Positions 1,370 to 35,087 of a stretch of 64,000 bases of DNA are shown piece after piece. The DNA comes from Phyllobates terribilis. Its lineage: Eukaryota. The position numbers were made by a program, and so were the translations under genes. Numbering within the stretch: the stretch's first letter is position 1; each line of letters starts with the position of its first letter. The DNA lies in contig NW_027362764.1 of the NCBI RefSeq assembly GCF_046119375.1, forward strand, positions 700,352,001 to 700,416,000, read 5' to 3'. Below the pieces are notes generated by a model. The model worked only from the letters and a program-made list of their open reading frames with translations. It was not told where the DNA came from and made no database searches.

Positions 1370-3325
1370 TCAAATCTTAGTGAGAGACAAACTAATATTC
1401 CGTGATCCAATGGGTCTGTCACTTAGCTCATTCACGGCAGTCATTGCTTCTTCGTAGCTGTGGGTGCAGACTGTAGCGTGCCCGGTGGACATTCCTTTTC
1501 TATTAAATTTTACATCAATGGAATCGGGAATGATGTTATAGCCATAGAAAAAGTCTAAAATTTCTTCATTGGTTATAGCGTATGGTAGGTTTGTCATGCG
1601 TATTATTGCTCCTGAGGACCTGTCAAAGTTTCGGGCAGCAGCCGAAAAAGAATTATTGTAATCATTGTAATTTGCATTTCTGCTGTCAAATCTGTCATAA
1701 GACTCATCTCTACCACCCATCTCCATTGCATAAGAACCACGTTGCCTTTCTGGAGAACTTCTAAATTCCTTACGGTTGTAGTTCTCCCCCATGTAAGAGT
1801 TTTCATTGGCTTCTGGTAGTGGAACCTTCATGTATCCATCTTTATACCCTTGAAACTGTGCCACTGGAGTATTATTGAAAGCACCAAACTCTTTTGCCTG
1901 TTCATCAGAAATACGCCTCAAAAAAACTTCTGTTCCCAAAAACGGTTGACGATTCAATACTTCAGCACGCATAGCTTGTTCTTCGGATTGAAACCTAACC
2001 AAGGCTTCTCCCAAACCAACTCCTTTGTTGTCAAAAAGCAAGAAGATATTATCTTCATGCACAAGAAATCCATCAAAGAATTTTTGTACTTCAATTTTAC
2101 TCACGTCGAAGGGAAAATTCCTTAAGTATACACATCTATTTAGATTAGATGGCTCTGGTCTTGGATATTCCTCATACGTGTCGCGTTGCTGTGGATATTC
2201 CTCATACATGTCGCGTTGCTGTGGATATTCCCCATACGAGTTGCGTTGCTTTGGATGTTCCCCATACATACTTCGCTGTGGTGGATATTCCTCATATGTG
2301 TCGAGTTGCTTTGGCGGGCTTTGGGTTTCATAAGATTCTATTAACTGCAACATCGCCTTCCTAGCAATAGGAAGAATGAGCACATGACGACCCTTTAATT
2401 CTTTTTTGCGTAAAGCAAGACATTTTTCGTATAGTCTCTCACTTTTCAACATGATGAAGCCTTCTCTTGTCCGATTGTTATGCTTATTAAGCAGGAATTT
2501 AATCTGAGAATCTGCCATATCAGGTGCAGAAAAAAAATGCCTAATATCTGGCTTCTGTACTGTAAATGGCAAGTTTTTCAGATGCACATAGAACTGTTGG
2601 TTTTGTGGCGACCTAGATCTTGTTCGGTTCCTCGGTTTGGAGTGTAGTTCACCTTTTTTTAAGGCCTTCCCCCACTTTTCTTCTGTCGATTTCGATATCG
2701 ATATAAACCTATGACCAATATATTCATTGTTAAAACTCAAAGCTGCATTAGCATGTGTTGCACTTGCAAACTTCACTAAAGCAGTTCCAGTCTTAAGACC
2801 ACCTAATCGCAGGAAAAAAACAACTTCAACAACATCTAGGTCTTTAAAAAACTGAATAATATCTTCCATTGTCACGCTGTATGGCAGCCCATAACAAGAT
2901 ACATAGATATCATTAGAATATGTTTCCTTTTTGTCATACTTCGGAACATATGATTCGTTATATTTTGACGCACTGCTTTGATTTCCTTCTTTCTTCGCCA
3001 TTTCCAATCGGTTCATATCACCAGAAGGTGGTACAGCTGGATGCTTTGGATTTTTATTAGTTTTACGGCTTGTTTCCAGAGTACTCTGCATTTCTGTCTT
3101 GCTGCTAAGCGAGAGATTCACATGCAAGTTCTTAATGACGCCTCCAGTCCGACTCATGCCTCGCCTGGCATCTTCATCCGTTGCAAATATGATAAATGCC
3201 TCACCAAGTTTTCCACCAATAATGTGTACTCCTCCATCAGGAATTTGCAAACCAGAAAAGAAATGCCGAATATCAACCGAACCAGCAGAAACAGGGAGCC
3301 CCTGTAAGCGGATCACTACAGCCAT
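1370..3325 (-). CDS. RBM12B: RNA-binding protein 12B (paralogue A), 651 aa, five RRMs, single coding exon
   Basis: N-terminus MAVVIRLQGLPVSAGSVDIRHFFSGLQIPDGGVHIIGGKLGEAFIIFATDEDARR matches the RBM12B RRM1 as I know it. RRM4 (CVYLRNFPFDVSKIEVQKFF...GVGLGEALVRFQSEEQAMRAE) and RRM5 (IRMTNLPYAITNEEILDFFYGYNIIPDSI) are also recognisable. The ORF is intact. A splice acceptor (ttttgttttcag|G) ends at 3351, 25 nt before the ATG. Confidence 0.95.
   Translation of the reverse strand: MAVVIRLQGLPVSAGSVDIRHFFSGLQIPDGGVHIIGGKLGEAFIIFATDEDARRGMSRTGGVIKNLHVNLSLSSKTEMQSTLETSRKTNKNPKHPAVPPSGDMNRLEMAKKEGNQSSASKYNESYVPKYDKKETYSNDIYVSCYGLPYSVTMEDIIQFFKDLDVVEVVFFLRLGGLKTGTALVKFASATHANAALSFNNEYIGHRFISISKSTEEKWGKALKKGELHSKPRNRTRSRSPQNQQFYVHLKNLPFTVQKPDIRHFFSAPDMADSQIKFLLNKHNNRTREGFIMLKSERLYEKCLALRKKELKGRHVLILPIARKAMLQLIESYETQSPPKQLDTYEEYPPQRSMYGEHPKQRNSYGEYPQQRDMYEEYPQQRDTYEEYPRPEPSNLNRCVYLRNFPFDVSKIEVQKFFDGFLVHEDNIFLLFDNKGVGLGEALVRFQSEEQAMRAEVLNRQPFLGTEVFLRRISDEQAKEFGAFNNTPVAQFQGYKDGYMKVPLPEANENSYMGENYNRKEFRSSPERQRGSYAMEMGGRDESYDRFDSRNANYNDYNNSFSAAARNFDRSSGAIIRMTNLPYAITNEEILDFFYGYNIIPDSIDVKFNRKGMSTGHATVCTHSYEEAMTAVNELSDRPIGSRNISLSLTKI
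2162..2311 (-). repeat. Coding minisatellite: 5 x 30 nt encoding a Tyr/Glu-rich 10-aa repeat in paralogue A
   Basis: Units start at 2162, 2192, 2222, 2252 and 2282 (tggatattcctcatacatgtcgcgttgctg-like). They translate to TYEEYPPQRS MYGEHPKQRN SYGEYPQQRD MYEEYPQQRD TYEEYP. Confidence 0.9.
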
Positions 3326-3950
3326 TTTTTAGGGTCTGAACGATTGTCACCTGAAAACAAAAGTGCACAACAGAAAAGGTAAATATATTGTAAAATGAAA
3401 TATATGCACATATAACAAAACATCTGATCTGTGCCTTCTATAGAAATAGTTATCACGCCTATACAAGGACTGTAAATAAAATAAAAAAAAAAATAAAAAA
3501 GCAATGCACACAATCAAATTGGCCCAATTAAATAAATAAGGGACGATGTTTAGGCTTCATGGGAAAGAAAGGGTTAGAAGTGTTAAGGCTTCATGCCTGC
3601 CAGATGAGCCGCTAGAAGTCCAATTACACAGGCCGACCTGGGGCACTAAGAAACCGCTAATCAGTTGCTCGATTGCCATTTCCTGTTGGTTAATAGCCTA
3701 TTTACAAAGGCCAACGGAGCTTCAGATGCGCACTGAAGGATCTGTAAGAGATCAGTGCACAAAAGTGTCAGTCTCTGCAGCGAGATTCCTATTTACACAA
3801 TAAGATGCACTGCTGAGAACAATGATCTAAGATTTCACCCGACGAACATGTTTTGCTGGTTCATGGGGTTATTGGCAGACTATTTAGAATTATTGTGAAA
3901 CAAGCGTTCCTAGGAATGATTATTTTTGATAATTTTGCAATGTACATTAA

Positions 3951-4219
3951 TTACACAGAATGACTTTTCAAACTAAGTCCCGCCACTCATTGCTTCACGG
4001 CAGAGCCAATCATTTAAATACACCTTCCCACCTGCTTGGTTTCCATCCACCTCCTCCCTTCTATGGCTCTATGAAGCCAGAGATGTCAAAGAAGAAGGGG
4101 TGGGGATAGATGGAAACCAAGCAGGTGGGAAGGTGTATTTAAATGATTGGCACCACCATGACGTACCGAGTGCCAGTACTTGGTTTGAACAGTCCTTCTG
4201 TGCTGACAGAGTCTCTCAA
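3951..4219. mobile_element. Kolobok T2-type MITE (gggactctgtcagcacagaatgact family), left end eroded
   Basis: Internal palindrome (cccacctgcttggtttccatc / gatggaaaccaagcaggtggg). Same family as the copies at 30763 and 55433. Confidence 0.7.
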
Positions 4220-4266: not shown

Positions 4267-4297
4267 CAGTTTAAAGCCTGAGGCTCTAAGAATTTAG
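4267..4297 (-). other. Predicted 31-nt non-coding exon 2 of paralogue A
   Basis: Minus strand reads tacatttttctttatttttgcag|CTAAATTCTTAGAGCCTCAGGCTTTAAACTG|gtaagt: strong acceptor and donor, no ATG. Confidence 0.6.
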
Positions 4298-4626: not shown

Positions 4627-4826
4627 CAAGAAAGACCGCGCCCAATTTAGGTGAAAAAAAAACCAAAGGATCCATATCTTCTGCCATGGACGAGTCTTTT
4701 CCACCAGTCATGCTTGAAAAAGACCTATGGCTTGGTCGAAACGTTGCATCCATGACACAATAAATGGAACCTTGAATTTTTTTTTTTTTTTTTTTGTCAC
4801 CTAAATTGGACGCTGTCTCTTTCTTG
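4627..4826 (+). mobile_element. Penelope-like pseudo-LTR remnant with an inverted duplicated tail
   Basis: About 55-bp inverted arms (caagaaagaccgcgcccaatttaggtga / tcacctaaattggacgctgtctctttcttg) enclose a hammerhead motif, followed by AATAAA and a T-tract. Confidence 0.6.
4710..4749 (+). ncRNA. Minimal type I hammerhead ribozyme motif (U3-A8 core variant)
   Basis: ATGC-TTGAAAA-A-GACC-TATGGCTT-GGTC-GAAAC-GTT-GCAT. Stem I ATGC/GCAT, stem II GACC/GGTC, GAAA core, palindromic stem III AACGTT. Confidence 0.6.
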
Positions 4827-6834: not shown

Positions 6835-9800
6835 ATTATTATTATCATTTATTATTATAGCGCCATTTATTCCATGGCACTTTACATGTGAAGAAGGGGT
6901 ATGTATACATACAAGAACAATTACAATAATCTTGAACACAATGTGACGGCGACTGATACAGGAGGAGCGAGGATCCTGCCCGCGAGAGCTCACAGTCTAC
7001 AAGGGAAGGGTGAGGATACAGTAGGCGAGGCTAGAGCTGGTCGTGCAGCATTATTTGTGGAGTGGTGGTTACTGCAGGTTGTAGACTTGTCGGAAGAGGT
7101 GAGTCTTCAGACTCTTTTTGAAGGTTTCCACGGTCGACGAGAGTCTGATGTGGTGGGGTAGAGAGCTCCAGAGTAGGGGGGGGGAGGGGGGGGGGGACTA
7201 GGTCAGAGATATATGGAGGAGACAGGTTGTGAATGGCTTTGTATGTCATGGTTAGGGTTTTGAACTGGAGTTTCTGGGCAATGGGGAGCCAGTGAAGAGA
7301 TTGACAGAGAGGAGAGGCCGGGGAATAGCGGGGGGACAGGTGGATTAGTCAGGCAGCAGAGTTTAGGATGGATTGGAGGGGTGCAAGAGTGTTGGAAGGG
7401 AGGCCACAGAGCAGGAGGTTGCAGTAGTCGAGGGGGGGAGATGATGAGGGCGTGCACTAGTGTTTTTGCAGATTCATGGTTGAGGAATGTGCGGATCCGC
7501 GAGATATTTTTGAGTTGGAGTCGGCAGGAAGTGGAAAGGGATTGGATATGTGGTTTGAAGGAGAGCTCAGAGTCCAGGGTTACCCCAAGGCAGCGAGCCT
7601 GGGGGACTGGGGACAGTGGGCTGCCATCGACTATGATGGATAGGTCAGTTGGGGGGGTTGAATGAGATGGCGGAAAGATGATGAATTCTGCTTTGTCCAT
7701 GTTAAGTTTTAGAAATCTAGCAGAGAAGAAGGATGAAATAGACAGACATTGTGGGATTTTGGTTAGTAAGGAGGCAATATCAGGTCCAGAGAGGTAGATC
7801 TGTGTGTCGTCAGCATAGAGGTGATAATGAAAGCCATGAGACTATGAGCTGTCCCAGGCCTAAGGTGTAGATGGAGAAGAGCAGGGGTCCTAGAACTGAA
7901 CCTTGGGGGACACCGACAGATAGGGGGTGAGATGAGGAGGTGGTGTGTGAGTGGGAGACACTGAATGTCCGGTCTGTTAGGTATGAGGAGATCCAGGATA
8001 GGGCCAAGTCTGTGGTGCCGAGAGATGAGAGAGTTTTTAGTAAGAGGGAATGGTCCACCGTGTCGAAGGCAGATGACAGGTCTAGGAGGAGGAGGACAGA
8101 ATAGTGTCGCTTAGATTTGGCGGTTAGTAGGTCATTGGTAACTTGGGTCAGTGCAGTTTCAGTAGAATGGTGCGGTCGGAAACCAGATTGTAGGCGGTCG
8201 AAGAGGGAGCAGGAGGAGAGGTGGGAGGACAGCTCAGAATGGACGTGTTGTTCCAGTAGTTTTGAGGCATAGGGGAGAAGTGATATGGGTCGATAGCTAG
8301 ACAGAGAGGATGGGTCAAGGGAGGGCTTTTTAAGGATGGGTGTGATTGAGGCATGTTTGAAGCATGAGGGGAAGACACCAGTTAGTGACAGGTTGAAGAG
8401 GTGGGCTAGGGCTGGGATGAAGATAGTGGTAAGGTTTAGGATGAGGTGGGACGGGTTTGGGTCAAGTTTACAGGTGGTGAGGTGTGATTTGGAGAGTAAA
8501 GAGGAAAGTTGATCTTCCGTAATGGTGGAGAATGTGGTTTTGGAGGAGGAGGGTTGAGTAGGTGTGGGGAGGGGCTGTGGGGGCTTTAGATAAAAGCTTT
8601 GTCTGATGGTGTCAATCTTCTGTTTGAAGAATGAGGCAAAGTCTTCGGTTGAAATAAGAGGAGAGGAAGGAGGCACTGGGGGACTGAGGAGAGAATTGAA
8701 GGTGTTGAATAGTTGTTTGGGGTTGTGAGACAGGGAGGATATTTGAGATGTGAAGTATGTTTGTTTTGCTGCAGTGAGTGTGGACTTGAAGGTAGTGAGG
8801 GACTGTTGGAATGCGATGAAGTGCTCATTGGAGTGGGACCTTTTCCATCTAAGCTCAGCGACCCTGGAGGCCCGTCGCAGTTCTTTAGTTAGGCTGGTGT
8901 GCCAGGGTTGTCTGTTGATTGTGCGAGCTTTGGTATGTGTGAGGGGGGCGACCAAATCGAGAGCTGCAGCTGTTGTACAAAGTGGCAGCAACATCTGCAT
9001 CATGTAAGGAACTAATGTCTGTAAGAGGGAGAAGGGATTCAGAGAGTGAGTGTAGGTCAAGGTGTTTGAGATTTCTGCGAGGGTATGCAAGTTTGTGGAG
9101 TGGGGATTGTTGCCCTGGAGAGGAGAGGGAAGAGAATGTAAGTAGGTTGTGGTCAGAGAGAGGGAGATGTGAGTTAGAGAGGTTAGATAGGGAACAGAGG
9201 CTGGTGAAGATGAGGTCCAGCGTGTGGCCATCTTTGTGGGTGGGTGTGGAAGACCACTGGGTAAGACCACAGGAGGAAGTGAGGGATAGAAGCTTAGAGG
9301 CAGATGAGAGGGAAGTGTCAATGGGGATGTTGAAGTCGCCATGAGGATAGTGGGGATGTCAACGGAGAGGAAATGAAGTAGCCAAGTGGTGAAGTGGTCA
9401 AAGAAAGTGGTGGCTGATCCTGGGGGGCGGTAGAGGACAGCCAGTTGGAGGTTGGAAGGGGAGTAGATGTGCACGCAGTACACTTCAAAAGAGGGGAGAG
9501 TAATTGAGGGCGGCAGTGGGATATGGGTGAAGGAGCAGTTTTCAGAGAGGAGGAAACCTATTCCTCCACCGTGCTTGCCGGTGGGTATGGGAGAGGTGGA
9601 ATCCGCCGTACGAAAGTGCAGCAGGAGAGGCCGTGTCAGAGGGGGTGAGCCAGGTTTCAGTGATGCCAAGGAAGGAAAGCTTGTTGGTGATGAAGAGGTC
9701 GTGAATGTAGGAAAGTTTGTTGCAGACGGAGCGAGCGTTCCATAGAGCTCCTGTTAGGGGGATTGGGGAAGCGGGGGCTGGGCGGATGGGTATAAGGTTA

Positions 9801-10227
9801 GAAGGGTTATGAGAGTTTGGGATAGATCGTGGGTAGGAGGTTTAAGTGACTGTGGGGATGTGGTGAGGAGGGCCAGGATTTGGAGAGATGTCGCCGGCAG
9901 TGAGGAGGAGCAGAGAAAGCGTTAGTAGGTGGGAGCAGGAGAGGGCATTAGGTGGCTGTCTGTGTTTGGAGGCAAAGGATTGTATGTTGAGGAATAGCTC
10001 TGAGGAGGAGGTGAGATGGGTGGGGAGAATGGAGGGAGAGATGAAGAGTTCCTTACTAGGTGTAGGGATTAGGGGTGGTTGTAAGAAGTGAAGGATTAAG
10101 GGGGTGAGGGTGAAAACAAAGACAAACATTGTTTACTGTGACAAAGTATCCAGTTACCTTCAGTTCACTTCAGATTCAATTCAGAATTAATTCATATTTC
10201 TCACACTTCAGCTAATGGACACTTAAG
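6835..10227 (-). mobile_element. Near full-length L2-clade LINE (APE endonuclease + RT, frameshifted) with an N-terminal 2A-like peptide
   Basis: ORF pieces give WNARSVCNKL / GITETWL / GGGIGFLL (APE) and QSGFRPHHSTETAL, LLDLSSAFDTVDH, GVPQGSVLGPLLF, YADD-region (RT). (ATT)n 3' tail at 6835. LLTAGDISPNPGP motif ends at 9869. Confidence 0.92.
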
Positions 10228-16650: not shown

Positions 16651-18678
16651 CCAATGTGGCCGTTCTATCACCCCCCCCATAGGGTGGTACCGGCCAATGT
16701 GGCCGTCCTGTCACCACCCCCCCCACAGGGTGGTACCCGCCAATGTGGCCATCCTGTCACCACCCCCCCCACAGGGTGGTACCCGCCAATGTGGCCGTCC
16801 TGTCACTACCCCACCCCCCCACAGGGTGGTACCCGCCAATGTGGCCGTCCTGTCACCACCCCCCCCCCCCCCACAGGGTGGTACCCGCCAATGTGGCCGT
16901 CCTGTCACCCCCCCCCACCACAGGGTGGTACCCGCCAATGTGGCCGTCCTGTCACCACCCCCTCCCCCACAGGGTGGTACCCGCCAATGTGGCCGTCCTG
17001 TCACCACCCCCCCCCACAGGGTGGTACCCGCCAATGTGGCCGTCCTGTCACCACCCCCCCCCCACAGGGGGGTACCCGCCAATGTGGCCGTCCTGTCACC
17101 CCCCCCCCCACAGGGGGGTACCCGCCAATGTGGCCGTCCTGTCACCCCCCCCCCCACAGGGTGGTACCCGCCAATGTGGCCGTCCTGTCACCCCCCCCCA
17201 CAGGGTGGTACCCGCCAATGTGGCCGTCCTGTCACCACCCCCCCCCACAGGGTGGTGCCCGCCAATGTGGCCGTCCTGTCACCACCCCCCCCACAGGGTG
17301 GTGCCCGCCAATGTGGCCGTCCTGTCACCACCCCCCCCCCACAGGGTGGTGCCCGCCAATGTGGCCGTCCTGTCACCACCCCACCAATGTGGCTGTCCTG
17401 TCACCACCCCCCCCCCCCCCCACAGGGTGGTACCCACCAATGTGGCCGTCCTGTCACCACCCCCCCCCACAGGGTGGTACCCGCCAATGTGGCCGTCCTG
17501 TCACCACCCCCCCCCACAGGGTGGTACCCGCCAATGTGGCCGTCCTGTCACCACCCCCCCCCACAGGGTGGTACCCGCCAATGTGGCCGTCCTGTCACCA
17601 CCCCCCCCCCCACAGGGTGGTACCCGCCAATGTGGCCGTCCTGTCACCACCCCCCCCCCCACAGGGTGGTACCCGCCAATGTGGCCGTCCTGTCACCACC
17701 CCCCCCCCCACAGGGTGGTACCCGCCAATGTGGCCGTCCTGTCACCACCCCCCCCCCCACAAGGGTGGTACCCGCCAATGTGGCCGTCCTGTCACCACCC
17801 CCCCCCCCACAAGGGTGGTACCCGCCAATGTGGCCGTCCTGTCACCACCCCCCCCCCACAGGGTGGTACCCGCCAATGTGGCCGTCCTGTCACCACCCCC
17901 CCCCCCCCACAGGGTGGTACCCGCCAATGTGGCCGTCCTGTCACCACCACCCCCCCCACAGGGTGGTACCCGCCAATGTGGCCGTCCTGTCACCACCCCC
18001 CCCCCCCACAGGGTGGTACCCGCCAATGTGGCCGTCCTGTCACCACCCCCCCCCCCCCCACAGGGTGGTACCCGCCAATGTGGCCGTCCTGTCACCACCC
18101 CCCCCCCACAGGGTGGTACCCGCCAATGTGGCCGTCCTGTCACCACCCCCCCCCCCACAGGGTGGTACCCGCCAATGTGGCCGTCCTGTCACCACCCCCC
18201 CCCCCCCACAGGGTGGTACCCGCCAATGTGGCCGTCCTGTCACCACCACCCCCCCCACAGGGTGGTACCCGCCAATGTGGCCGTCCTGTCACCACCCCCC
18301 CCCCCCCACAGGGTGGTACCCGCCAATGTGGCCGTCCTGTCACCACCCCCCACAGGGTGGTACCCGCCAATGTGGCCGTCCTGTCACCACCCCCCCCCCC
18401 CCCCCCCACAGGGTGGTACAAGCCAATGTGGCCGTCCTGTCACCACCCCCCCACAGGGTGGTACAAGCCAATGTGGCCGTCCTGTCACCACCCCCCCCCC
18501 CACAGGGTGGTACAAGCCAATGTGGCCGTCCTGTCACCACCCCCCCCCCCCAGGGTGGTACAAGCCAATGTGGCCGTCCTGTCACCACCCCCCCACAGGG
18601 TGGTACCCGCCAATGTGGCCGTCCTGTCCCCACCCCCCCATAGGGTGGTACCCGCCAATGTGGCCGTCCTGTCCCCAC
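16651..18678. repeat. Minisatellite, about 42 units of about 48-52 bp: ACAGGGTGGTACCCGCCAATGTGGCCGTCCTGTCACCA + variable poly-C
   Basis: Units counted by eye. Local variant sub-arrays: GGTGCC at 17250-17355 and TACAAGCC at 18410-18570. One internally deleted unit at about 17380. Confidence 0.97.
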
Positions 18679-19328: not shown

Positions 19329-19783
19329 CAAATCTCACACCCAGCAACGAAAACAGCGGCCGCCGACCCGAAATTGAAGAGCTTCTAAAATGGCGTCTGC
19401 ACGCTGCTCCGTCCTTGTGGAAAGTCTGGGGCTGAAGCGCCAGTGACGTCACTACTCAGCTATAAGCGTCGCTGACCAGGACGCAGACATTTTGATGGTT
19501 GGCTTCAGTCATTTACTGTGAACGGATAACTCTACTTATGCAGACTATAACAGTCGCATTTCGTTTATTTCTTTCTTTTTTTTGTCTGTAGGGGAAATAG
19601 AAGCCACGGGGGTTTGTTTTTTTTTATTTTTTTTTCCGGGCCTGCGAAACGAGGTGGTGCCCATGCGCAGTTATGAGAGCGCGCAGCATGCTGCCGCCAT
19701 TTTGCTCAGACGTCGTTAGTGACCAGAGCAGCTGAGGGGCCTCCGCCGAGAGCGGAGACCGGACCTGTGCTGTGCAGCTCACG
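19329..19783. promoter_or_regulatory. CpG-rich bidirectional promoter with the non-coding first exons of both RBM12B paralogues
   Basis: CpG/GC-rich unique sequence. YY1-type motifs point outward on both sides (AAAATGGCGTC 19387-19397; GCCGCCATTTTG 19693-19704). Also CRE TGACGTCA at 19444-19451, NRF1-like GCCCATGCGCA at 19659-19669, and central T-tracts. Donors: minus TTG|GTAAAT (GT at 19328-19327) and plus ACG|GTGAGT (19784-19789). Confidence 0.75.
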
Positions 19784-20257
19784 GTGAGTATGCATAGTGT
19801 TATCATCGTGAGGAGGAGCTCGGTGCGGCCTGCAGCTATTGTCCGGGGCACCGCATGCATTTCCTAGCCTTCTCAATACCACAGCCCCGGTCTGCACGAC
19901 ACACTACAAAGCCTGAACGTAAAGGAATTCTTCACCTTCGGGGACAATTGTCTATAAACTTAATTGCACTTATCTGGGGAGAAAAATAATTTTTGCTATT
20001 GGTTTTTATAAAAATGTTTGCTCCTATAGCCTCTGTGTTACACTGTCTATTGCTGGATGCAGAATGAGGTAACTAAGGATCTAACAGTGAGCTAATTTTG
20101 GCAAAACAAGTCTGATTTTTTTTATTTTTTTTGTCTTTTTTCAGAGCTCCTCTCAGTGGCTTCATGACCACATTAAATATGGAAGTGTAGGAAACAGTCA
20201 TTAATGCAAAAAACTGCAACATTTTTACTGAAACCCAATTGCAAAAATAATAACCTA

Positions 20258-20493
20258 TTTTTCTATAGAGCCAACATATTCTGCAGCGCATTACATACAT
20301 TATCATCACTGTCCCCATTGGATCTCACAATCTACATTCCCTATCAGTATGGTCTTTGGAGTGTGGGAGGAAACTTAAGCAAACACAGGGAGAACATACA
20401 GACTCCTTGCAGATGTGTCCTTGGTGGGATTTGAACCCAGGACCCCAGCGCTGCAAGGCTGCAGTGCTAACCACTGAACCACCGTGCTACCCC
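20258..20493 (-). mobile_element. tRNA-derived V-SINE-like element (small internal deletion)
   Basis: Minus strand has A box TGGTTCAGTGGTTAGC, B box GGTTCAAATCC, the V-domain tgtatgttctccctgtgtttgc, and an L2-like tail. Confidence 0.8.
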
Positions 20494-20580
20494 TAAAATG
20501 AAATTTAGCCTGAACTACATTCATTTAAAGGGGTTGTACTGGGACAACCCTTAACTACTTCTGGACTACCCATAGACTTT

Positions 20581-21002
20581 GAAGAGAACTTGTCATGTCC
20601 CAAAACTCTTATTAACCTGCAGATATGGAGTTAATAGCGCTGTAAAGCCGTGCAGCCACCACACTGAAGGCTCATCTACTAGGAGGAAATTAACTTTATT
20701 CCTCCGGGCAGCCAAGGGCTTTCATTCATAGAGGCGCGGCTTCAGTCACTCAATGCTCAGTGAGTGAACGGTGGCTGTAACTGCCCCCTTGCACTGACTG
20801 TCGGCTCGGCCCTGAGCAATGAGTGACTGAAGCCGCGCTGACCACGTCTCTATGAATGAAAGCCCTTGGCTGCTGGGAGGAATAAAGTTAATTTCCTCCC
20901 AGAGTTCAGTGCGGCGCCCACGCAGCTTCATAATGCTATTAACCTGCAGATTGACCCCATATCTGCAGGTCAGTGACTCTTGAGGATGTAACAGGTTGCC
21001 TT
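20581..21002. mobile_element. Palindromic T2-type MITE (tgtcatgtcccc family); another copy at 35662-35935
   Basis: Long internal inverted repeat (gcagccaagggctttcattcatagag / ctctatgaatgaaagcccttggctgc). Ends in ggttgcc-TTTTAA. Confidence 0.7.
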
Positions 21003-21007
21003 TTAAC

Positions 21008-21299
21008 CAGGGCTGTGGAGTCTGTAAGCCAAACCTCCGACTCCTCAATTTCCCAGGCTCCGACTGCACATCCCTGCCTCACTACTGAGCGTGTATATAA
21101 AGTGCAGCACAGATTCATCTCAACTAAAAGCCAAGACCCTTAGATCAGGAACAGAACAAACATTTATAGGACATTTCATAACTTTCCCAAATTCTTATGA
21201 AAACATTTACAGCACATCCTGCATTGTACTACTGTACCCAATGTATTATATATTTTAGGAGTCGGTCCATTTTATACCGACTCCAACTAAACAGCCCTG
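21008..21299. mobile_element. hAT MITE copy 2
   Basis: CAGGGCTGTGGAGTC...CAGCCCTG. TSD CTTTTAAC/CTTTAAAC. Confidence 0.85.
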
Positions 21300-22649
21300 C
21301 TTTAAACGTCTCGACAGTCTGGCTCCTACTCTGCATTGATGTTGTAAAGCGTCCCTGCATAGTAGAGCTGCTACCCGTGATTGTGCGACTAGGGATCAGG
21401 CTGTCTGAAACAACCAGAGTCCCTATAGAGAAGGCACAGGAGGTTTATTATCGTCTGTGCCTTCTTCATCACTATACACAGTGCTAAACAAGCTCTGTAT
21501 GCAGTAATGGGAAGCGCTGACATCACTTCCTCCACCATACACAGCAGTCATGTGATCACTGTGTATAGGGAGGGAGCAGGAGCTGCTGGGTCATAGGAGA
21601 CTCGGACAGCTCTGCTATGCAGCCAGAAGGCTGAATGTCCCCTGTAACTGGGGGTAATAGACCAGCTACAGTTACAAGGTAAATAGGATGAAGATAAAGA
21701 TTTAAATATTGAAATTCCTCTCCCCTAACAAAGGTCTTTTATGATCTGATGGGGGTAAAATGTTTGAAATAAATGAAGAATAAAAAAAAATAAAGTGCCA
21801 CTGTAAGTCCAAATTGCTGTTAATTAGCTCTGGCCCTGTAAAAACAAAAAAAAGTGCCCGATATATAACAATAATTGTTACAGAAAGGGGAACACATTTT
21901 TAAATTATATATTTTAAAGGTTTTTTGTAGTCTTTAAAAAAATGGGAATAAAAGTAATTAAATTTCCTTATTTTTCCACTGATTTTTGCTAGATATCAGC
22001 AAAAAAAAGACAATGTGACATAAAAATGAAGCCCCACATGTGAAAAAAAGAGGCAAAAACCACTTGAATATCCGAACGCGAAAATATTGTAAAGCTTTTT
22101 AAACCACTTGTACGATAAAACAAAACTGAATATGTGCCTGGTCAGGGACTGGTTAAACGGGCCCGGTCTTGAACTGGTTGCATATATTTTTTTCACCTTG
22201 TAAAAGAATTTATGCTCTCCTCCCGTACCGGCACCATTCCAACATTGTTGGTGCTGGGTCTCCCAAGGCTCATGTGACGTTGTTATAGCATGTGAGATGT
22301 GCGGCTCATGGGCTGCAGTGCTCGCACCTCCCCCAGTCGTCTGAAGGAAGTGAGGGCACCGCAGCCTAATATTATTGGCCACAGGGCTCACGTGACATAG
22401 TGTCATGCAAGCCTTGGGCTCTGACATCGCTGGAATGATGCCAATAATAGAGGTGAGTTCAGGGTATTTTTATTTACAAGGTGGAATATAGTATTTAAAG
22501 GAGTTGCCATAGTAGTGGCATAACCCTCTTTTTTTTTTTTTTTTTTTTTTAAGAATAGTCCTTAATAGTGGACAAGAGGTATAATAGGTTTCCTGGGCAT
22601 TCTATACATGTTATGAACATAAATCCCATATAAAAATATGCGTTTTGAG

Positions 22650-22902
22650 CAGGGCTTTGGAGTCTGTATAAAATGGACCGACTCCTAAAATATGTGCTGT
22701 AAATGTTTTCATAATTATTTTGGAAAATTATGAAAGGTCCTATAAATGTCTGTTCTGTTCCTGATCTAAGGATCTCGGCTTTTAGTTGAAATCAATCTGT
22801 GCTGCACTTCACATACAAGCTCAGTAGTGAGGCAGGGCTGGGGATTCGGAAGTCGGGGAAATTGAGGAGACGGTGGTTTGGCTTACCGACTCCACAACCC
22901 TG
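22650..22902. mobile_element. hAT MITE copy 3 (inverted orientation)
   Basis: TIRs present. Perfect 8-bp TSD GTTTTGAG. Confidence 0.88.
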
Positions 22903-22922
22903 GTTTTGAGTATCCTTTTAGG

Positions 22923-23229
22923 CAGGGCTGTGGAGTCGGTATAAAATGGACAGACTCCTAAAATATATAATAAATTAGGTACAGTAGTTCAATGCAGTTT
23001 GTGGGGAATATTTTTCTCATAAGAATTTGGGAAAGTTATGAAATGTCCTATAAATGTCTGTCCTATTCTTGATCTAAGGGTCTAGACTTTTAGCTGAGAT
23101 GAATCTGTACTACAGTAAATTTATCCCTTAAACATGAGCCATGTATGGGGGAGTCGTGGAGTCAGAGTTGGAGTCGGTGACATTGAAATTGAGGAGTCGG
23201 AGGTTTGGCTTCACGTCTCCACAGCCCTG
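22923..23229. mobile_element. hAT MITE copy 4 (inverted orientation), 20 bp from copy 3
   Basis: CAGGGCTGTGGAGTCGG...CCACAGCCCTG. No clean TSD. Confidence 0.8.
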
Positions 23230-23590
23230 CTGGCAACCTCATTCTCCCAAGTCAGGCCGATTACAGAGATACCAGATTTATAGAAGGTTTTTTTTGTAGT
23301 GAAAAAAAGAAACATTCTAAAAAATATATTTATTTTGTCTCTGTTTTCTCAGACCCATAATTTTTTTTCATAGCTTTTATTGGTACCATTTTGGGATACA
23401 TGCAACTTTTTTGTAGTTTTTTTTTATGTTTTTTGGAAGAAAAAAAAACAGCAATTCTGGTGTTCATTTTTTTATAGAATTTATTATATACATAATTCTT
23501 TTTAGGTTTAGGGGATTTAAAAAATATAATACATTTTTTTTATAGAATTATCAGTGCCTGTGATTTATTTGTCTTTTTTTGTGTTTGCAG

Positions 23591-23638
23591 GTTCTTGTAC
23601 AAACATAACTAGCAAAGACTGCCAGAGATATCGTACAG
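23591..23638 (+). other. Predicted 48-nt non-coding exon 2 of paralogue B
   Basis: ttgtcttttttt-gtgtttgcag|GTTCTTGTAC...ATCGTACAG|gtaagg: strong acceptor and donor, no ATG. Confidence 0.6.
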
Positions 23639-25847
23639 GTAAGGCATGTTGGAATGTAGCCTCCAAAAAAAAAAAAATAGTTGTTTGTATATGGAATATG
23701 AACCATCATTGTCCTGGTCATGTCATGGATATGCAGGTGCTTGAGAATGATAGGTGGTACTGCGCATATAGCAAGCCCCCTTTTGTGTGTTCATCACATC
23801 ACCAGGACATATTTTTATACAGTGGAAATAATCCACGTAAATGACTAAAGGCAGTAAAGAATTCTTACAGAAAGCAGTAACACAAAGTGGTGGTCCAAAG
23901 GAAAAGTACTTTTTCTCCTAACTCCATATCTATTTGATGGCATGAACAAAGCTATTCTATTATACTTCTTTTAAAAATTCCTTATCGTTCTCCAACTACA
24001 CTGTCTAACAGCTATTGTATTTTTTTCTGTTTCCTGTCTGATGACGATAAGTTTAAGTATCAATAGTGCATGCTGGGGTACTCAAACGAAGCGTCATCCT
24101 TTGCCTTTGGACCACTCCTTTAAGGGATTTACCAGTGAAAAAATTGTCTGAGTAGCCATTCTCTGTGAAATGAACATTTTGCTTACTTCATCAGTAAGCG
24201 TTTCCAATGCTTTCTGACCTTTTTGGACATCCCCTGTTCTGACCTGAAGTTCAACAGCTCTTGGGAAGGGAGGTCTGGGGACTGCCCATTACAGGGGGTG
24301 AAGACTCATGCAGTGAGAGAGGGAGATACATCGGGTGGGACACATTGTCACCAAAGATGAGGGGAGGTTGAACAAGCTAGTGCAAAGGAATCTGCAGCAT
24401 GAATATCATAGGGGCAGGAAGTAGTTTACAGCCCACAAATGCTGCAGCAAGGCTGACGAGAACGGAGGCTATAAATATGCAAAACAAAATTGCACAAAAA
24501 TTGCTAAAGGGGAAGTGAAGAACATTTTGATTTGATATACAATCTCTTTAAAAGTATTCTCATTTATGAAGTAATGGCATATTATCCAATTATACCATCA
24601 CTCTATGATCAGTGAAGGTCCGTCTCTTGGCATTCCCACCAATGCTCAGAATAAATGCAATGCGGACCTGCACTGGTGGCTCCTCAGGCCCCTGCTCTTT
24701 AGGGGATGCAGCAGTCTTTCCTTGCACAGACATATGACCAATGTATAGTTCTGGTGGAAAAAAGTTAGGAAGGGGCCTCTGTGCAGTTCCTGTTTAATGG
24801 GGTATTCCCATCGCAGCCATTCATGACTAAGGTGGGAATACCAGTCTGTGTGGTGGGCAGGAATATGGAAGAAACAGTGGGTCTAATGCCCTTATAGAAG
24901 GGGATGGGAGTAAGGCCAGTTTCACAAATTTTTATACAGACTGTTATTTCTGCATCAGCCATGGGTCTCCTGACCAGAACTCAGCAGCCTCTTATTTGCT
25001 TATGAGGTTGCTGAGTTTGGCCAGGAGACCCACAGCTAGTCCAGAAATCCCTGTCGTAAAACTCATTCATGTGGCACTGGCCTTATGGAATCAGCTTGGC
25101 ACGTTCTGCTCAGCTGTTTCCATAATTGTGGCCACATGTGGCTGCATATTTACAGGCAGTTTTATGTCGAGCACGAAGAATAGGGTACTGCTCATTCTCT
25201 TGGTTGCGGAGGTTTTAGAGTTCAGTTTCCACCAATCGTAGTTTAAGCTCACAACAAAATATAAAAATGGTCCATTTTTGATCCAGAAAAAAGGGCAACT
25301 TTTCATGTGTGCAATTTATGTGGCATCCATTTTCATACATCATCAGTTATTAAAATGTAAAAGATCAAATACAGTTTCCTATGTATAGGAGAGTCTGGTC
25401 TTAAATACATAAGAAATATTGCATGTTGTTCGTTTTTTTTCAGACATACGTTTCATGATTTAAAAAAAAAAAAAAAAAGTCATGTGAACAGCCCTATTGA
25501 ATAATATAATAATATTGGTCTGAGTTCTCTGGTTTTATTCACGGACAGCACTGGTTCGAAAATTCCCTTTAGTCCAGCATCAAATAATCCAAAAAGCTTT
25601 GGAAAGTAAACCTCAAGAGATTGTCCTTGTTTTTTTGTTTTTTTTAAATTTGGTTTACAACTAAATTTTAAACGTTTTAGCCAGTGTGCCGATCTGTGTT
25701 GTGGTTTTAGTTATACAAGCCACAGCGCTCTGTTGGGTCTATCACACGATGGGAGCAAGCAGTGCCAACTAGGTCCTGTTAACTTACAATAGGGTCTGTT
25801 GGATCACGTATTACTGGTGCCTTACTGTTCATGATTTCTGTTACTAA

Positions 25848-31469: not shown

Positions 31470-31473
31470 TTAA

Positions 31474-32335: not shown

Positions 32336-32337
32336 AA

Positions 32338-32451: not shown

Positions 32452-33203
32452 ATAACGTCACAGGCCCTATTAAACACCGGATGTGCCAGAATGCTGCAAA
32501 TCTTTATGCTTAATTCTAGTCTGCTTCCTTTTTTTTCTGTATAGATGGCATAGTCTGACCTCTCCTTCACACCCTAGCTGATGGTTGTTTATACACGATT
32601 ACTATAATGTAGTTTTACATGCTTTTAGTGAGTTTTATTATTATTTTGTTTCTGCAATCCTAAAGCTGTGTTTACACAGCAAGATAATCGTGAACAAGCG
32701 TTGTTAAAAAACGCTTGTTCCACCATTATCTTGCTGTGTAAACAGCCTACTGATCACGCAATGAACTTGCAAAGCGTTCGTTCTTCGGGTGAAATGATCT
32801 TTTGCACAGCTCAAAAAATCCACGTTTTCAGCGGCGCATCGTCCTGTGTAAATAGGACTCATTCCTGAAAACTATGGTAGCCTGTAAGTGATCTTTTACA
32901 GATCGTTTACTTTGGTCTGTTTGTGTAAGCAGGCATGTAAACGACCGCCTATCTGTATAGTGTACATTTCTTGTCATACTGTCTCAGTATGTATAAACAG
33001 GCAAGGATGTGGGAGCAAATAAGCAATATTTCTTTCTTTTCTGCCACATGCTTGTGCTATGTATGTCTCAATCACACAGCATCCCATAAAGTAGAAATTA
33101 GCTTTTATTACTGCCGCATATCCATTCTTTTATTGCAGAAAAATTACAGATTTTTATATACTTCTTTTTCCTATCTGCAGGTATAATTGCTGTTGACCTG
33201 AAA

Positions 33204-35087
33204 ATGTCGCTAGTCGTCCGGCTGCAGGGTCTTCCTGCCGTAGCAGATTCCTTTGATATTCGGCAGTTCTTTTGTGGATTGAATATTCCCAGAGGTGGAG
33301 TGTATATCACAGGTGGAAAATACGGTGAGGCTTATATTGTATTTGCAACGTATGAAGATGCCCGTCACGCCTTGAGCCTGTCGTGCCATCTTCTTAAGGA
33401 TTCATGTGTCCGTCTAACATACAGCAGTGAAGAGGAAATGAGACAAGCGCTGGAAATATACCAGATAGGTCTAAAGCCGACAACGAGTGCTCCGTATAAC
33501 TCTGAGGTCAACGCAAGAGGTTATGAATCCTATTTGCCAACGTTTTCATATATTTACTTACATGGCATGCCAATCAAAGCCACAAAGGTGGACATACGAG
33601 AGTTTTTCAAGGGACTCCTGGTGGTAGATGTCTTGTTTTTGAAATTCATAAATGGCATAAGGAATGGAAATGCTATTGTCAAGTTTGGAAGAAGCACTGA
33701 TTCCAGTGAAGGGCTGAAACTTCACCAGATGCCCCTTTGTGGTTCGCCAGTGACACTAAAGCTTTCTAATGAGGTTGAATGGAAAAAGAATGGTGGCGTA
33801 CATATTGATGCGAGGCGGAATTCTCCTCCACCTGTACCTAGCTATGCAAGACGACGGAGCAGAACTAGATCACGATCACCAAGAATTAGAAGAAGAGCTA
33901 GAAAAGGATCACCTTTTGTACGTGAATGCTTTGTGCATATTATTAATTTGAGCTACAGAGCTGAGAAAAGAGATATCAAGAAGTTCTTTTTTGATCTTGA
34001 CATGAAGGATTCTCAGATTACCTTCCTTGTTGACAAAGAAGGTAAAAGGACAAGAGAAGCTTTTGCCATGTTCACAACAGAAAAAGATTACAAAAGAGCA
34101 CTCAACTTGGACAAGGAAACCTTCAAGGGTCACCGTTTAACCATAGTGCCCGTTTCCAAAAAGAACATGAATGTGTTAATCGATCGAATGAAAATGAGAG
34201 TCTGCAAAGATCGCTCTGACAAGAAAAAGTCTCCAAGTCGTTCCCCGCAAGAACGAAGGTACTTATATCTGCGAAATTTTGCATTTGATATCACTAAAAA
34301 GGATGTTAAGAATTTCTTTTATGGGCAAAGTATAAAAGAAGAAGATGTCATTCTGTTAAATGACAGTAAAGGAGTCGGGCTTGGGGAAGCATTGGTCAAA
34401 TTTCCTAGTGAAAAATATGCATTGAAAGCTGAAAAAGATAACAAACAAACATATCTGGGGATTAAAGTAGTCTTAAGCCGCATCAGTGAGGAACAAATGA
34501 AGGCATTAAAGGAGTCCAATCAAGCAGATGAGTCCATGGTTACTGAAGCCGATGACATGCCTGATTTTACTTCAGATTCAACGTTTAATATGGTTACCAG
34601 TGTGAATACACCTCCAGCTCCAGTACAAACCAACGGAGAGGCATCAACGCTGGACTCCAGTGAGGTAGCGCTTCCTTCCATATCGGAAAGTGTGCCACCT
34701 TCAAATAATGAACCGGAATCCAAGGAGAAACCGGAGGAACCGGAATTGCCTCCGAAAGCACAGGAAGTTACTTTGACCGAGAACAATTCTACAGAGGACA
34801 CTGTGGATGACGCCAACGCTGTCGATGAAGAAATGTCCTACGAAGGTGATGAAACCAAGTCCGCTGAAGTAACTTTACTGTTCGTTAGGAACTTGCCCTC
34901 TTCTGTCACCACTGCTGAGCTTATGGACTTTTTTCATGACTACAAAGTGAGCTCTGTGAATCTGAAAAATATTGAGAGAGGCATTGCCACTGTACTCTTG
35001 CTAAGTTACGGGGATGCGATATCTGCCATAAATACCCTTAACAAGAAAGAAGTGGGCTCTAAGCCGGTGTTCCTCAGTTTAATTTGA
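33204..35087 (+). CDS. RBM12B: RBM12B-like protein (paralogue B, more divergent), 627 aa, five RRMs, single coding exon
   Basis: Intact ORF with RRM1 MSLVVRLQGLPAVADSFDIRQFFCGLNIPRGGVYITGGKYGEAYIVFATYEDAR, an RTRSRSP motif before RRM3, and RRM4 YLYLRNFAFDITKKDVKNFF...GVGLGEALVKFPSE. The acceptor cttctttttcctatctgcag|G ends at 33180, 23 nt before the ATG. Confidence 0.9.
   Translation: MSLVVRLQGLPAVADSFDIRQFFCGLNIPRGGVYITGGKYGEAYIVFATYEDARHALSLSCHLLKDSCVRLTYSSEEEMRQALEIYQIGLKPTTSAPYNSEVNARGYESYLPTFSYIYLHGMPIKATKVDIREFFKGLLVVDVLFLKFINGIRNGNAIVKFGRSTDSSEGLKLHQMPLCGSPVTLKLSNEVEWKKNGGVHIDARRNSPPPVPSYARRRSRTRSRSPRIRRRARKGSPFVRECFVHIINLSYRAEKRDIKKFFFDLDMKDSQITFLVDKEGKRTREAFAMFTTEKDYKRALNLDKETFKGHRLTIVPVSKKNMNVLIDRMKMRVCKDRSDKKKSPSRSPQERRYLYLRNFAFDITKKDVKNFFYGQSIKEEDVILLNDSKGVGLGEALVKFPSEKYALKAEKDNKQTYLGIKVVLSRISEEQMKALKESNQADESMVTEADDMPDFTSDSTFNMVTSVNTPPAPVQTNGEASTLDSSEVALPSISESVPPSNNEPESKEKPEEPELPPKAQEVTLTENNSTEDTVDDANAVDEEMSYEGDETKSAEVTLLFVRNLPSSVTTAELMDFFHDYKVSSVNLKNIERGIATVLLLSYGDAISAINTLNKKEVGSKPVFLSLI

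What the first reader, a model, noticed from the sequence alone, without database searches (positions are those of the whole stretch)
1370..35087. Head-to-head pair of divergent RBM12B paralogues built around one promoter, with a mirrored three-exon plan
Seen in sequence: two intact five-RRM RBM12B-family ORFs on opposite strands, pointing away from one CpG island. Each ORF lies in a single exon whose acceptor is 25 nt (A) or 23 nt (B) before the ATG. Each is preceded by a predicted micro-exon (31 nt and 48 nt) and a first exon at the island. Established: human has a single RBM12B, head-to-head with TMEM67; mouse has duplicated Rbm12b genes; RBM12 shares its promoter and 5' exons with CPNE1. 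Inference: an old inverted duplication made a co-regulated two-protein module. The proteins are far diverged yet both intact in TE-saturated DNA, which suggests both are under selection, possibly with split roles.
Basis: partly seen in the sequence, partly recalled or inferred. Interest (0 to 1): 0.75.

Follow-up and report, generated by a model that had tools for sequence, protein, structure and literature searches.

The report
Frog RBM12B paralogue pair, shared promoter
Two old, diverged copies of the RNA-binding gene RBM12B sit back to back in this poison-frog-like genome and are both transcribed outward from one ~300-bp promoter; this is a sound gene annotation and an example of a known kind of arrangement, not a new mechanism.

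Summary
ORF A (1370-3325, minus, 651 aa) and ORF B (33204-35087, plus, 627 aa) are intact, collinear RBM12B-family proteins, 32% identical to each other.

Spliced transcript contigs from four runs in two studies show both genes starting in one CpG-rich region:
- A exon 1 is 19329 to about 19427 (minus).
- B exon 1 is at or before 19725 to 19783 (plus).
- The start sites are therefore about 300 bp apart.

B has the predicted three exons, including the 48-nt micro-exon at 23591-23638. A's exon 1 is spliced directly to its ORF exon, so the predicted 31-nt micro-exon (4267-4297) is skipped in every assembled form. It is conserved in Eleutherodactylus coqui with its splice sites.

A maximum-likelihood tree puts the duplication on the anuran stem, after the split from salamanders. 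Both copies are under purifying selection (dN/dS 0.38 and 0.34 against E. coqui).

The head-to-head layout and four promoter motifs are conserved in E. coqui, and the layout probably in Xenopus. In Ascaphus the copies lie in tandem on one strand, so an "inverted duplication" origin is unproven.

Orthologues of both copies are already annotated in many frog genomes, but I found no paper describing the pair. It is a new member of a known kind, of modest interest.

The parts
1370..3325 (-). Coding sequence of paralogue A (651 aa). It is the conservative RBM12B copy, orthologous to genes annotated as RBM12B in Dendrobates, Ranitomeya and other frogs.
   Evidence: Intact ORF. Best hits are dendrobatid RBM12B at 72-77% identity. 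It sits in the A clade with 100/99 support. dN/dS is 0.38 against E. coqui.
3326..3350 (-). 25-nt 5' leader of A's ORF exon. The acceptor AG lies at 3351-3352 on the minus strand.
   Evidence: Sequence read. The RNA loose end at 19327 continues with the reverse complement of this leader plus the ATG in all four runs. The region is conserved in E. coqui (86%) and X. tropicalis.
2162..2314 (-). 30-nt tandem repeat inside CDS A. It encodes the decapeptide repeats (E-E-Y-P-Q-Q-R-D-x-Y type) of the linker between RRM3 and RRM4. B has no such repeat.
   Evidence: Tandem repeat, translation, gap in the A/B alignment.
4267..4297 (-). Predicted 31-nt micro-exon of A, with TTTTTGCAG before it and GTAAGT after it. 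It is not included in the assembled A transcripts and may be an alternative exon.
   Evidence: Located. Conserved with its splice sites in E. coqui. Skipped in the contigs of all four runs.
16671..18678 (.). 49-bp minisatellite of about 42 copies inside A's 16-kb intron. It is GC-rich but CpG-poor and is not part of the promoter island.
19329..19427 (-). Non-coding exon 1 of A. The donor is TTTG|GTAAAT, and the exon is spliced directly to 3350.
   Evidence: Minus-strand contigs of 2204-2357 nt cover 19327-19419/19427 in X1, X2 and X16. All four runs have the loose end that runs into ORF-exon A. An Illumina adapter at 19418 in X2 marks a 5' end of a fragment. The exon holds no ATG.
19428..19724 (.). 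Shared bidirectional promoter core. It holds a CRE (AGTGACGTCAC, 19443-19453), a conserved 40-mer (19464-19503), an NRF1-like GCCCATGCGCAG (19659-19670) and a YY1-like GCCGCCATTTTG (19693-19704).
   Evidence: The interval lies between the outermost contig ends of A and B. The four blocks are conserved in the same order in the E. coqui spacer. A 21-nt mirrored element at 19387-19407 / 19683-19703 is 86% complementary. The factor names are motif resemblances from my own knowledge, not tests.
19725..19783 (+). Non-coding exon 1 of B. This is the minimal extent; the true start may lie a little upstream. The donor is CACG|GTGAGT.
   Evidence: Joint 19782->23590 (cut +1, GT..AG) in X1 and X2. X15 carries a loose end CTGTGCAGCTCAC before 23590. 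The 5' limit is derived from the X2 bin depth.
23591..23638 (+). 48-nt non-coding micro-exon (exon 2) of B.
   Evidence: Joint on its 5' side. The loose end behind 23641 equals the leader of ORF-exon B in X1 and X15. Conserved with both splice sites in E. coqui.
33181..33203 (+). 23-nt 5' leader of B's ORF exon. The acceptor AG is at 33179-33180.
   Evidence: 80% conserved in E. coqui.
33204..35087 (+). Coding sequence of paralogue B (627 aa). It belongs to the fast-evolving anuran-specific copy, subclade B1.
   Evidence: Intact ORF. Orthologues are Ranitomeya imitator at 82%, Anomaloglossus at 75% and E. coqui at 68%. B clade support is 100/100. dN/dS is 0.34. Eight runs of the same organism hold 100% of the sampled words of 33181-35600.

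Best explanation
The region holds two functional, divergently transcribed paralogues of the RNA-binding protein gene RBM12B.

A is the conservative copy. B belongs to a second, faster-evolving lineage that arose by duplication on the anuran stem. B later duplicated again in hyloid frogs; the window carries B1, and B2 lies on another chromosome in relatives.

Both mRNAs start in one CpG-rich nucleosome-sized region. A starts at about 19427 and runs leftward. B starts at or before 19725 and runs rightward. The ~300 bp between them carries CRE-, NRF1- and YY1-like motifs that are conserved in Eleutherodactylus coqui.

Each gene has non-coding 5' exon(s) and its whole coding sequence in one terminal exon. 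A is exon 1 plus the ORF exon across a 16-kb intron. B is exon 1, a 48-nt exon and the ORF exon.

Shown here: the structure, the splicing, that the two starts lie about 300 bp apart, the age of the duplication, purifying selection on both copies, and conservation of the layout in E. coqui.

Inferred: the shared promoter couples the expression of the two proteins. They have also divided or diversified roles through their different linkers. A has Tyr/Pro/Gln/Arg decapeptide repeats. B has an Arg/Ser-rich stretch and a long acidic linker.
For: - ORFs and homology.
- RNA, from four runs in two studies: a GT..AG joint 19783|23591; a loose end behind 23641 that equals the ORF-B leader; minus-strand contigs over 19327-19427 whose continuation equals the ORF-A leader plus ATG; introns empty of contigs except at repeats; an adapter at 19418.
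- All introns are GT..AG and no 5' exon contains an ATG.
- Careful ML tree: Anura A+B 100/99, A clade 100/99, B clade 100/100, each clade holding Ascaphus, Discoglossus, Xenopus, pelobatoids and neobatrachians, with salamanders outside.
- dN/dS against E. coqui: A 0.38 (bootstrap 0.29-0.50), B 0.34 (0.27-0.43), dS about 0.53. Eight of the ten RRM modules score 0.11-0.28, with A's RRM2 at 0.49 and B's RRM5 at 0.39. Linkers reach 0.9.
- E. coqui: B on the minus strand at 119,217,859-119,219,688 and A on the plus strand at 119,239,670-119,241,568 of CM069426.1. They are divergent, 20 kb apart, with no other called gene between them.
- Micro-exons, acceptor regions and four promoter blocks are collinear with E. 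coqui.
- X. laevis has two inverted, near-identical first exons about 830 bp apart that match the N-termini of B-type and A-type models.
- X. tropicalis has an RRM gene head-to-head with an A-type copy, 9.7 kb upstream.
Against: - Contigs cannot give true transcript starts, strand or abundance, so the ~300-bp distance is an upper-bound estimate and co-regulation is not measured.
- The runs are labelled 'RNA?' only. Their RNA nature is inferred from the spliced contigs.
- A's conserved 31-nt exon is unused in the contigs, so A's isoform set is incomplete.
- In Ascaphus the paralogues lie in tandem on one strand. The shared promoter is therefore not a feature of all anurans and is not needed to retain both copies.
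- The Xenopus evidence is indirect. P0031 and P0041 were not on record, and the 756-aa X. tropicalis neighbour was not identified by sequence.
Confidence: 0.87

Rival explanations
1. There are two adjacent but independently regulated core promoters. The genes merely abut inside one island, and the layout is a neutral leftover of a rearrangement with no coupling of expression and no joint function.
For: - Ascaphus keeps both lineages intact without the head-to-head layout.
- Each direction has its own YY1-like element next to its own start.
- No quantitative expression data were obtainable, because contigs give no levels.
Against: - The ~300-bp spacer, with the same four motif blocks in the same order, is conserved between this frog and E. 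coqui, while the remaining ~30 kb of spacer has diverged almost completely.
- Both mRNAs are present in the same four samples.
- Divergent starts less than 1 kb apart are generally co-regulated. This is established knowledge on bidirectional promoters and was not tested here.
Confidence: 0.2
2. The pair arose by a tandem (direct) duplication on the anuran stem, each copy with its own promoter. An inversion then brought B head-to-head with A in the ancestor of pipoids plus neobatrachians. This rivals only the reader's 'inverted duplication' origin.
For: - Ascaphus has B, A1, A2 and A3 all on the plus strand within 325 kb.
- Apart from a 21-nt YY1-like element, the two arms of the window locus show no mirror-image homology outside the ORF exons.
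- Tandem duplication is the commonest mode of gene duplication (general knowledge).
Against: - With only Ascaphus on one side against Xenopus plus hyloids on the other, parsimony cannot polarise the change. Ascaphus could carry the derived inversion.
- X. laevis shows an inverted repeat of the first exons, although its roughly 90% identity points to a recent event or gene conversion.
Confidence: 0.5
3. B is a decaying or silent duplicate, an ORF intact only by chance in repeat-rich DNA.
For: - B's stem branch is twice as long as A's, 0.36 against 0.18.
- Pfam recognises fewer RRMs in B.
Against: - B is spliced from three exons in RNA contigs.
- dN/dS is 0.34, and no bootstrap value exceeded 0.49.
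- Intact orthologues exist across Anura.
- B's RRM1 has dN/dS 0.11.
Confidence: 0.01

Closest known systems
RBM12B of amniotes (single gene; mouse has the recent duplicates Rbm12b1/Rbm12b2)
   Same: The multi-RRM architecture is collinear, with the conserved N-terminal module MAVVIRLQGLP... The whole coding sequence lies in one terminal exon behind non-coding 5' exon(s). A is 39-44% identical to turtle, bird and mammal RBM12B over its full length or its aligned part.
   Different: Anurans carry a second, much older and more diverged lineage (B, about 32-35% identical to A and to amniote RBM12B). Some carry a third (B2). The mouse duplicates are a separate, recent event; they are named in the papers, and their recency is from my own knowledge.
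COL4A1/COL4A2-type paralogue pairs, and H2A/H2B histone pairs, on a shared bidirectional promoter (from my own knowledge)
   Same: Two paralogous genes lie head-to-head with transcription starts a few hundred bp apart in one GC-rich promoter, and the arrangement is conserved over long evolutionary time.
   Different: In those systems the two products co-assemble in fixed stoichiometry, which explains the linkage. No interaction between RBM12B-A and RBM12B-B is known or tested. The linkage is also absent in Ascaphus.
CPNE1-RBM12 promoter and 5'-exon sharing (PMC2568002)
   Same: It involves a member of the same RBM12 family, with its coding sequence in one exon, whose expression is tied to a neighbour through a shared promoter.
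   Different: CPNE1 and RBM12 are unrelated genes on the same strand that share a promoter and non-coding exons by alternative splicing. Here two paralogues on opposite strands share only the promoter region and no exon.
Xenopus rbm12b gene family ('RNA binding motif protein 12B gene 2', 'gene 3', as named in database records)
   Same: X. tropicalis 'gene 2' (P0031) and X. laevis P0029 fall in the B clade. P0040, P0041 and P0049 fall in the A clade. The first exons are mirrored in X. laevis.
   Different: Xenopus has several A-type copies and different annotated first exons. Identity to the window proteins is only 40-47%.

Membership tests
RBM12B protein family | Full-length collinear homology to RBM12B orthologues and placement inside the RBM12B clade | tested here: met
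   Both proteins hit annotated RBM12B proteins over 100% of their length: A at E 1e-143 to turtle RBM12B, B at 4e-101. Both nest within the batrachian RBM12B clade.
RBM12B protein family | Several RRM domains | tested here: met
   Pfam RRM_1 scores 103 bits for A as a whole and 78 bits for B. By module, A has four above the cut-off. B has three above it plus one at 18.6 bits. The fifth module is recognisable in each protein only by alignment.
RBM12B protein family | Coding sequence in a single terminal exon preceded by non-coding exon(s) | tested here: met
   RNA contigs splice non-coding exons onto acceptors 25 and 23 nt before the ATGs. No upstream ATG is present.
Bidirectional-promoter gene pair (divergent starts less than 1 kb apart) | Opposite strands, divergent orientation, no gene in between | tested here: met
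   A exon 1 is on the minus strand and B exon 1 on the plus strand. Nothing lies between them but 297 bp.
Bidirectional-promoter gene pair (divergent starts less than 1 kb apart) | Transcription starts less than 1000 bp apart | tested here: met
   The outermost contig ends are 19427 (A) and about 19725 (B). Contigs can only underestimate exon 1 length, so the true distance is at most about 300 bp. Exact starts need CAGE.
Bidirectional-promoter gene pair (divergent starts less than 1 kb apart) | CpG-island context | tested here: met
   CpG o/e is 0.66-0.91 at 18.5-20 kb with GC 0.49-0.58. The E. coqui counterpart has o/e 0.9-1.2. This is a weak island by mammalian criteria.
Bidirectional-promoter gene pair (divergent starts less than 1 kb apart) | Correlated expression of the two genes | tested here: inconclusive
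   Both mRNAs are present in the same four samples.
Co-assembling paralogue pair (COL4A1/A2 or H2A/H2B type) | The two products form one complex | not testable with these tools
   No interaction data are available. This needs co-immunoprecipitation or a similar assay.
Inverted (mirror) segmental duplication | Mirror-image homology of the two arms beyond the genes, and an inverted order in the earliest-branching lineages | tested here: inconclusive
   Only a 21-nt mirrored element was found at the promoter. Ascaphus has the copies in direct orientation. X. laevis has mirrored first exons, but they are about 90% identical and so look recent.

The most novel reading that the evidence does not exclude
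The A/B pair is a stoichiometrically coupled two-subunit RNA-binding module. On this reading, B captured the antisense side of A's CpG-island promoter through an inversion after a stem-anuran duplication. The linkage has then been kept for roughly 200 million years in pipoid and neobatrachian frogs because the two proteins act together. A would supply Tyr-rich repeat linkers, and B an RS-like and acidic effector arm. This would be an RNA-binding analogue of the COL4A1/COL4A2 or H2A/H2B pairs.
Probability: 0.12. Interest if true: 0.55.

Novelty: new member of a known kind. Interest (0 to 1): 0.33.

Why it matters
The work gives an RNA-supported gene model for both genes in a very large, repeat-rich frog genome, including 16-kb and 9.5-kb introns and a 48-nt exon that gene predictors tend to miss.

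It shows that anurans have two ancient RBM12B lineages where amniotes have one. Frog 'RBM12B-like' annotations therefore hide a clean A/B (and B1/B2) orthology that should be reflected in gene names.

It also offers a natural test case. The head-to-head pair in Xenopus and hyloids can be compared with the tandem pair in Ascaphus to ask whether a shared bidirectional promoter constrains the divergence of paralogue expression. RBM12B itself is poorly understood, so a lineage with two subfunctionalised copies in an experimental model (Xenopus) could help to separate its functions.

Tried and rejected
1. I first took the GC-rich block at 16.5-18.7 kb for the promoter island. It is a 49-bp minisatellite with low CpG o/e and lies inside A's intron.
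2. Blocks at 13.8-14.9 kb conserved with E. coqui were considered as A's promoter. They were rejected because their sequence looks like a shared transposon (TTAACCCCTTAA-type ends) and the RNA places A's exon 1 at 19.3-19.4 kb.
3. The candidate A donor at 18955 (GTTG|GTGAGT) was rejected. The RNA uses 19329.
4. Ranitomeya imitator loci for both genes returned no DNA because the file was too large. dN/dS therefore used E. coqui only.
5. X. tropicalis P0031 and X. laevis P0041 are not on record, so head-to-head gene models in Xenopus could not be confirmed directly.
6. A short-word BLAST of the micro-exons, first exons and promoter core against the Xenopus and Ascaphus loci found only poly-T noise.
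7. The search of earlier findings for RBM12B / TMEM67 / CIBAR1 gave nothing. TMEM67 and CIBAR1 synteny could not be tested, because no protein was available to query and long ORFs in 35-64 kb gave only transposon domains.
Exons were handled one at a time by reference. The only concatenation was a local check that no ATG spans the 5' exon junctions.


Full report
**What is in the sequence**

The window holds two long intact ORFs of the same family on opposite strands. ORF A is 1370-3325 (minus, 651 aa). ORF B is 33204-35087 (plus, 627 aa). They align end to end at 32% identity, E 7e-96.

Pfam RRM_1 scores 103 bits for A and 78 bits for B. Scanned module by module, RRM_1 passes its cut-off in four of A's five collinear modules. 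In B it passes in three, with a fourth at 18.6 bits. 'Five RRM' is therefore a statement of homology, not of five independent Pfam calls.

The linkers differ:
- A carries decapeptide repeats encoded by a 30-nt tandem repeat at 2162-2314.
- B lacks them. It has an Arg/Ser-rich stretch and a long acidic linker before the last RRM.

**Identity and age**

B's nearest relatives are proteins annotated 'RNA-binding protein 12B-like':
- Ranitomeya imitator, 82%
- Anomaloglossus, 75%
- Bufo, 70%
- Eleutherodactylus coqui, 68%
- more distantly, the X. tropicalis protein named 'RNA binding motif protein 12B gene 2', 40%

A's nearest relatives are 'RNA-binding protein 12B' of Dendrobates tinctorius and Ranitomeya (72-77%), then all other frogs, then amniotes at about 40%. 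The genome is thus a dendrobatoid frog.

I built two maximum-likelihood trees: a quick one of 81 proteins and a careful one of 54 proteins, under LG+C20+F+G4 and rooted on Latimeria. Both resolve anuran RBM12B into two clades. Each clade contains Ascaphus, Discoglossus, Xenopus/Rhinophrynus, pelobatoids and neobatrachians.
- A clade: 100/99
- B clade: 100/100
- the two together: 100/99
- salamanders as their sister: 98/95
- caecilians outside, with duplications of their own

The duplication therefore happened on the anuran stem. B's stem branch is twice as long as A's (0.36 against 0.18). Inside B, hyloid frogs have a further split. B1 contains the window's copy. B2 comprises 700-800-aa proteins of Phyllobates, Dendrobates and Ranitomeya on another chromosome.

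**Transcription and splicing**

Eight runs of one organism hold 100% of the sampled words of B's ORF exon. I laid the contigs of four of them, from two studies, on 18700-24699. That stretch was chosen to include the CpG-rich region and to avoid the minisatellite.

The runs are labelled only 'RNA?'. They behave as RNA: contigs are spliced at GT..AG, introns are empty apart from repeats, and one loose end is an Illumina adapter.

For B:
- A joint links 19783 to 23591 in X1 and X2 (3807 nt skipped, GT..AG).
- X15 shows the same exon-1 tail as a loose end before 23590.
- In X1 and X15 the sequence behind 23641 continues with TAATTGCTGTTGACCTGAAAATGTCGCTAG, which is the leader and start of ORF B at 33181.

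For A:
- Minus-strand contigs of 2204-2357 nt cover 19327-19419/19427.
- In all four runs they continue, beyond 19327, with the reverse complement of A's leader plus ATG.
- A's exon 1 (19329 to about 19427, donor TTTG|GTAAAT) is thus spliced across a 15,978-nt intron directly onto the acceptor at 3350.

The 31-nt unit at 4267-4297 has good splice sites and is conserved in E. coqui, but no assembled form includes it. Contigs drop rare variants, so it may be an alternative exon. The 'mirrored three-exon plan' is confirmed for B only.

No 5' exon contains an ATG, so the ORF ATGs are the first in both mRNAs.

**The promoter**

The outermost contig ends leave 297 bp (19428-19724) between the two genes. 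Contigs can only shorten first exons, so the true starts are at most that far apart.

The stretch at 18.5-20 kb has CpG o/e 0.66-0.91 at GC 0.49-0.58. The neighbouring GC-rich 2 kb (16671-18678) is a 49-bp minisatellite with CpG o/e 0.33-0.43 and lies in A's intron.

Aligned with the middle of the E. coqui spacer, four blocks are conserved in the same order:
- AGTGACGTCAC, a full CRE palindrome
- a 40-mer at 19464-19503
- GC(C/G)CATGCGCAGT, NRF1-like
- GCCGCCATTT followed by ACGTCGT, YY1-like

A 21-nt element including AAAATGGCG inside A's exon 1 is mirrored by the YY1-like block next to B's start. The transcription-factor names are motif resemblances from my own knowledge, not tests.

**Conservation of the layout**

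In E. coqui, B lies on the minus strand at 119,217,859-119,219,688. A lies on the plus strand at 119,239,670-119,241,568 of CM069426.1. They are divergent, 20 kb between the ATGs, with no other called gene in the spacer. Outside the ORFs, only the acceptor regions, the two micro-exons and the promoter blocks are alignable, and they are collinear.

In X. laevis, the first exon of the B-type model has a near-identical inverted copy about 830 bp away. That copy matches the N-terminus of A-type models. In X. tropicalis, an RRM gene starts head-to-head 9.7 kb upstream of an A-type copy. These Xenopus data are indirect, because two look-ups failed.

In Ascaphus truei, B and three A copies all lie on the plus strand within 325 kb: 72.827, 72.862, 73.106 and 73.151 Mb. 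The head-to-head layout is therefore ancient (pipoids plus neobatrachians) but not universal. The data cannot say whether the original duplication was inverted, or tandem and later inverted.

**Selection**

Nei-Gojobori estimates against E. coqui:
- A: dN/dS 0.38 (bootstrap 0.29-0.50)
- B: dN/dS 0.34 (0.27-0.43)
- dS is about 0.53 for both, so it is not saturated.

Most RRM modules are more constrained than the linkers. Eight of the ten RRM modules score 0.11-0.28, with A's RRM2 at 0.49 and B's RRM5 at 0.39. B's RRM1 is the lowest at 0.11. Some linkers approach 0.9, though others are as constrained as the RRMs (0.15-0.43). B is not a decaying copy.

**What is known and what is new**

Orthologues of both genes are already predicted and named in about 15 anuran genomes, so the genes are not new. 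Full-text searches found no paper on frog rbm12b paralogues or on their arrangement. The one relevant paper describes CPNE1-RBM12 promoter and exon sharing (PMC2568002).

Paralogue pairs on a shared bidirectional promoter are a known kind; COL4A1/COL4A2 and H2A/H2B are examples from my own knowledge. I file this as a new member of that kind. It has a useful natural contrast in the tandem Ascaphus arrangement, and it is of modest interest.

**Limits**

- Only the one read-laying run used contigs. Starts, strand, abundance and the use of A's micro-exon remain to be measured.
- Synteny with TMEM67 and CIBAR1 could not be tested.
Exons were treated one by one by reference.

Noticed in passing
window 16671-18678: A 49-bp minisatellite of about 42 copies, 89% matching, with consensus CCCCCCCCACAGGGTGGTACCCGCCAATGTGGCCGTCCTGTCACCCCC. 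It begins about 650 bp downstream of A's exon 1 donor, inside A's first intron. It keeps all three plus-strand frames open for about 2 kb, which produces spurious 665-727-aa ORFs.
   Followed up: partly
window 7813-9669 (-): A 619-aa ORF with a reverse-transcriptase domain (RVT_1, E 3.6e-25). It is a retroelement inside A's 16-kb intron, in a strongly GC-skewed stretch (6-10 kb). A second GC-skewed stretch at 26-30 kb in B's intron 2 was not examined.
   Followed up: partly
window 20300-20500, 20900-21300, 22900-23300: Parts of B's intron 1 have contig word depths in the thousands to tens of thousands in all four RNA runs, with many odd joints. These look like highly expressed or highly repeated transposon families, not B transcripts.
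   Followed up: no
window 53693-54208 (-) and 60604-61005 (+): ORF fragments with a BED zinc finger (hAT-like, E 4e-4) and a DDE_3 transposase domain (Tc1/mariner-like, E 2e-14). ORFs of 110 aa or more in 35-64 kb showed no host gene, though short-exon genes would have been missed.
   Followed up: partly
L009 (X. laevis CM004476.1) 9050-9230 (-) and 9940-10110 (+): Two inverted copies of a ~180-nt segment, roughly 90% identical by eye, each ending in the same donor (CAGAG|TAAGT). Each encodes the N-terminal peptide annotated for both B-type (P0029) and A-type (P0041, P0042) proteins. Such high identity between first exons of paralogues that split on the anuran stem suggests gene conversion or a recent local inverted duplication.
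   Followed up: partly
L009 22507-23591 (-): A third RBM12B-like coding remnant, 28-38% identical to B- and A-type proteins depending on query and segment. It lies about 7 kb downstream of X. laevis B in convergent orientation and is not called as a gene in that annotation.
   Followed up: no
Proteins P0018, P0021-P0023, P0010, P0013, P0027: Hyloid frogs have a further B-lineage paralogue, B2. In the dendrobatids it is 700-800 aa, with long branches, and in Ranitomeya it is on a different chromosome from A and B1. In the other hyloids it is 509-660 aa. Ranitomeya imitator also has two A-type models (P0123, P0125) on the A/B chromosome. The family is more dynamic in frogs than current names show.
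   Followed up: partly
P0017 (Spea bombifrons, 1062 aa): This annotated 'RBM12B' matches A over 100% of A's length at 49% identity and also matches B. Given its length, it may be a fused gene model of two neighbouring paralogues.
   Followed up: no
window 19368: A C>G difference in A's exon 1 in the contigs of X1, X2 and X16, probably an allele. X15 has no contig call at this site.
   Followed up: no
window 4627-4826: An earlier first-stage note (s1-241595) reports a minimal hammerhead ribozyme in a Penelope-like remnant here. It lies in A's intron about 330 nt upstream of the 31-nt micro-exon in the direction of transcription. I did not examine it.
   Followed up: no
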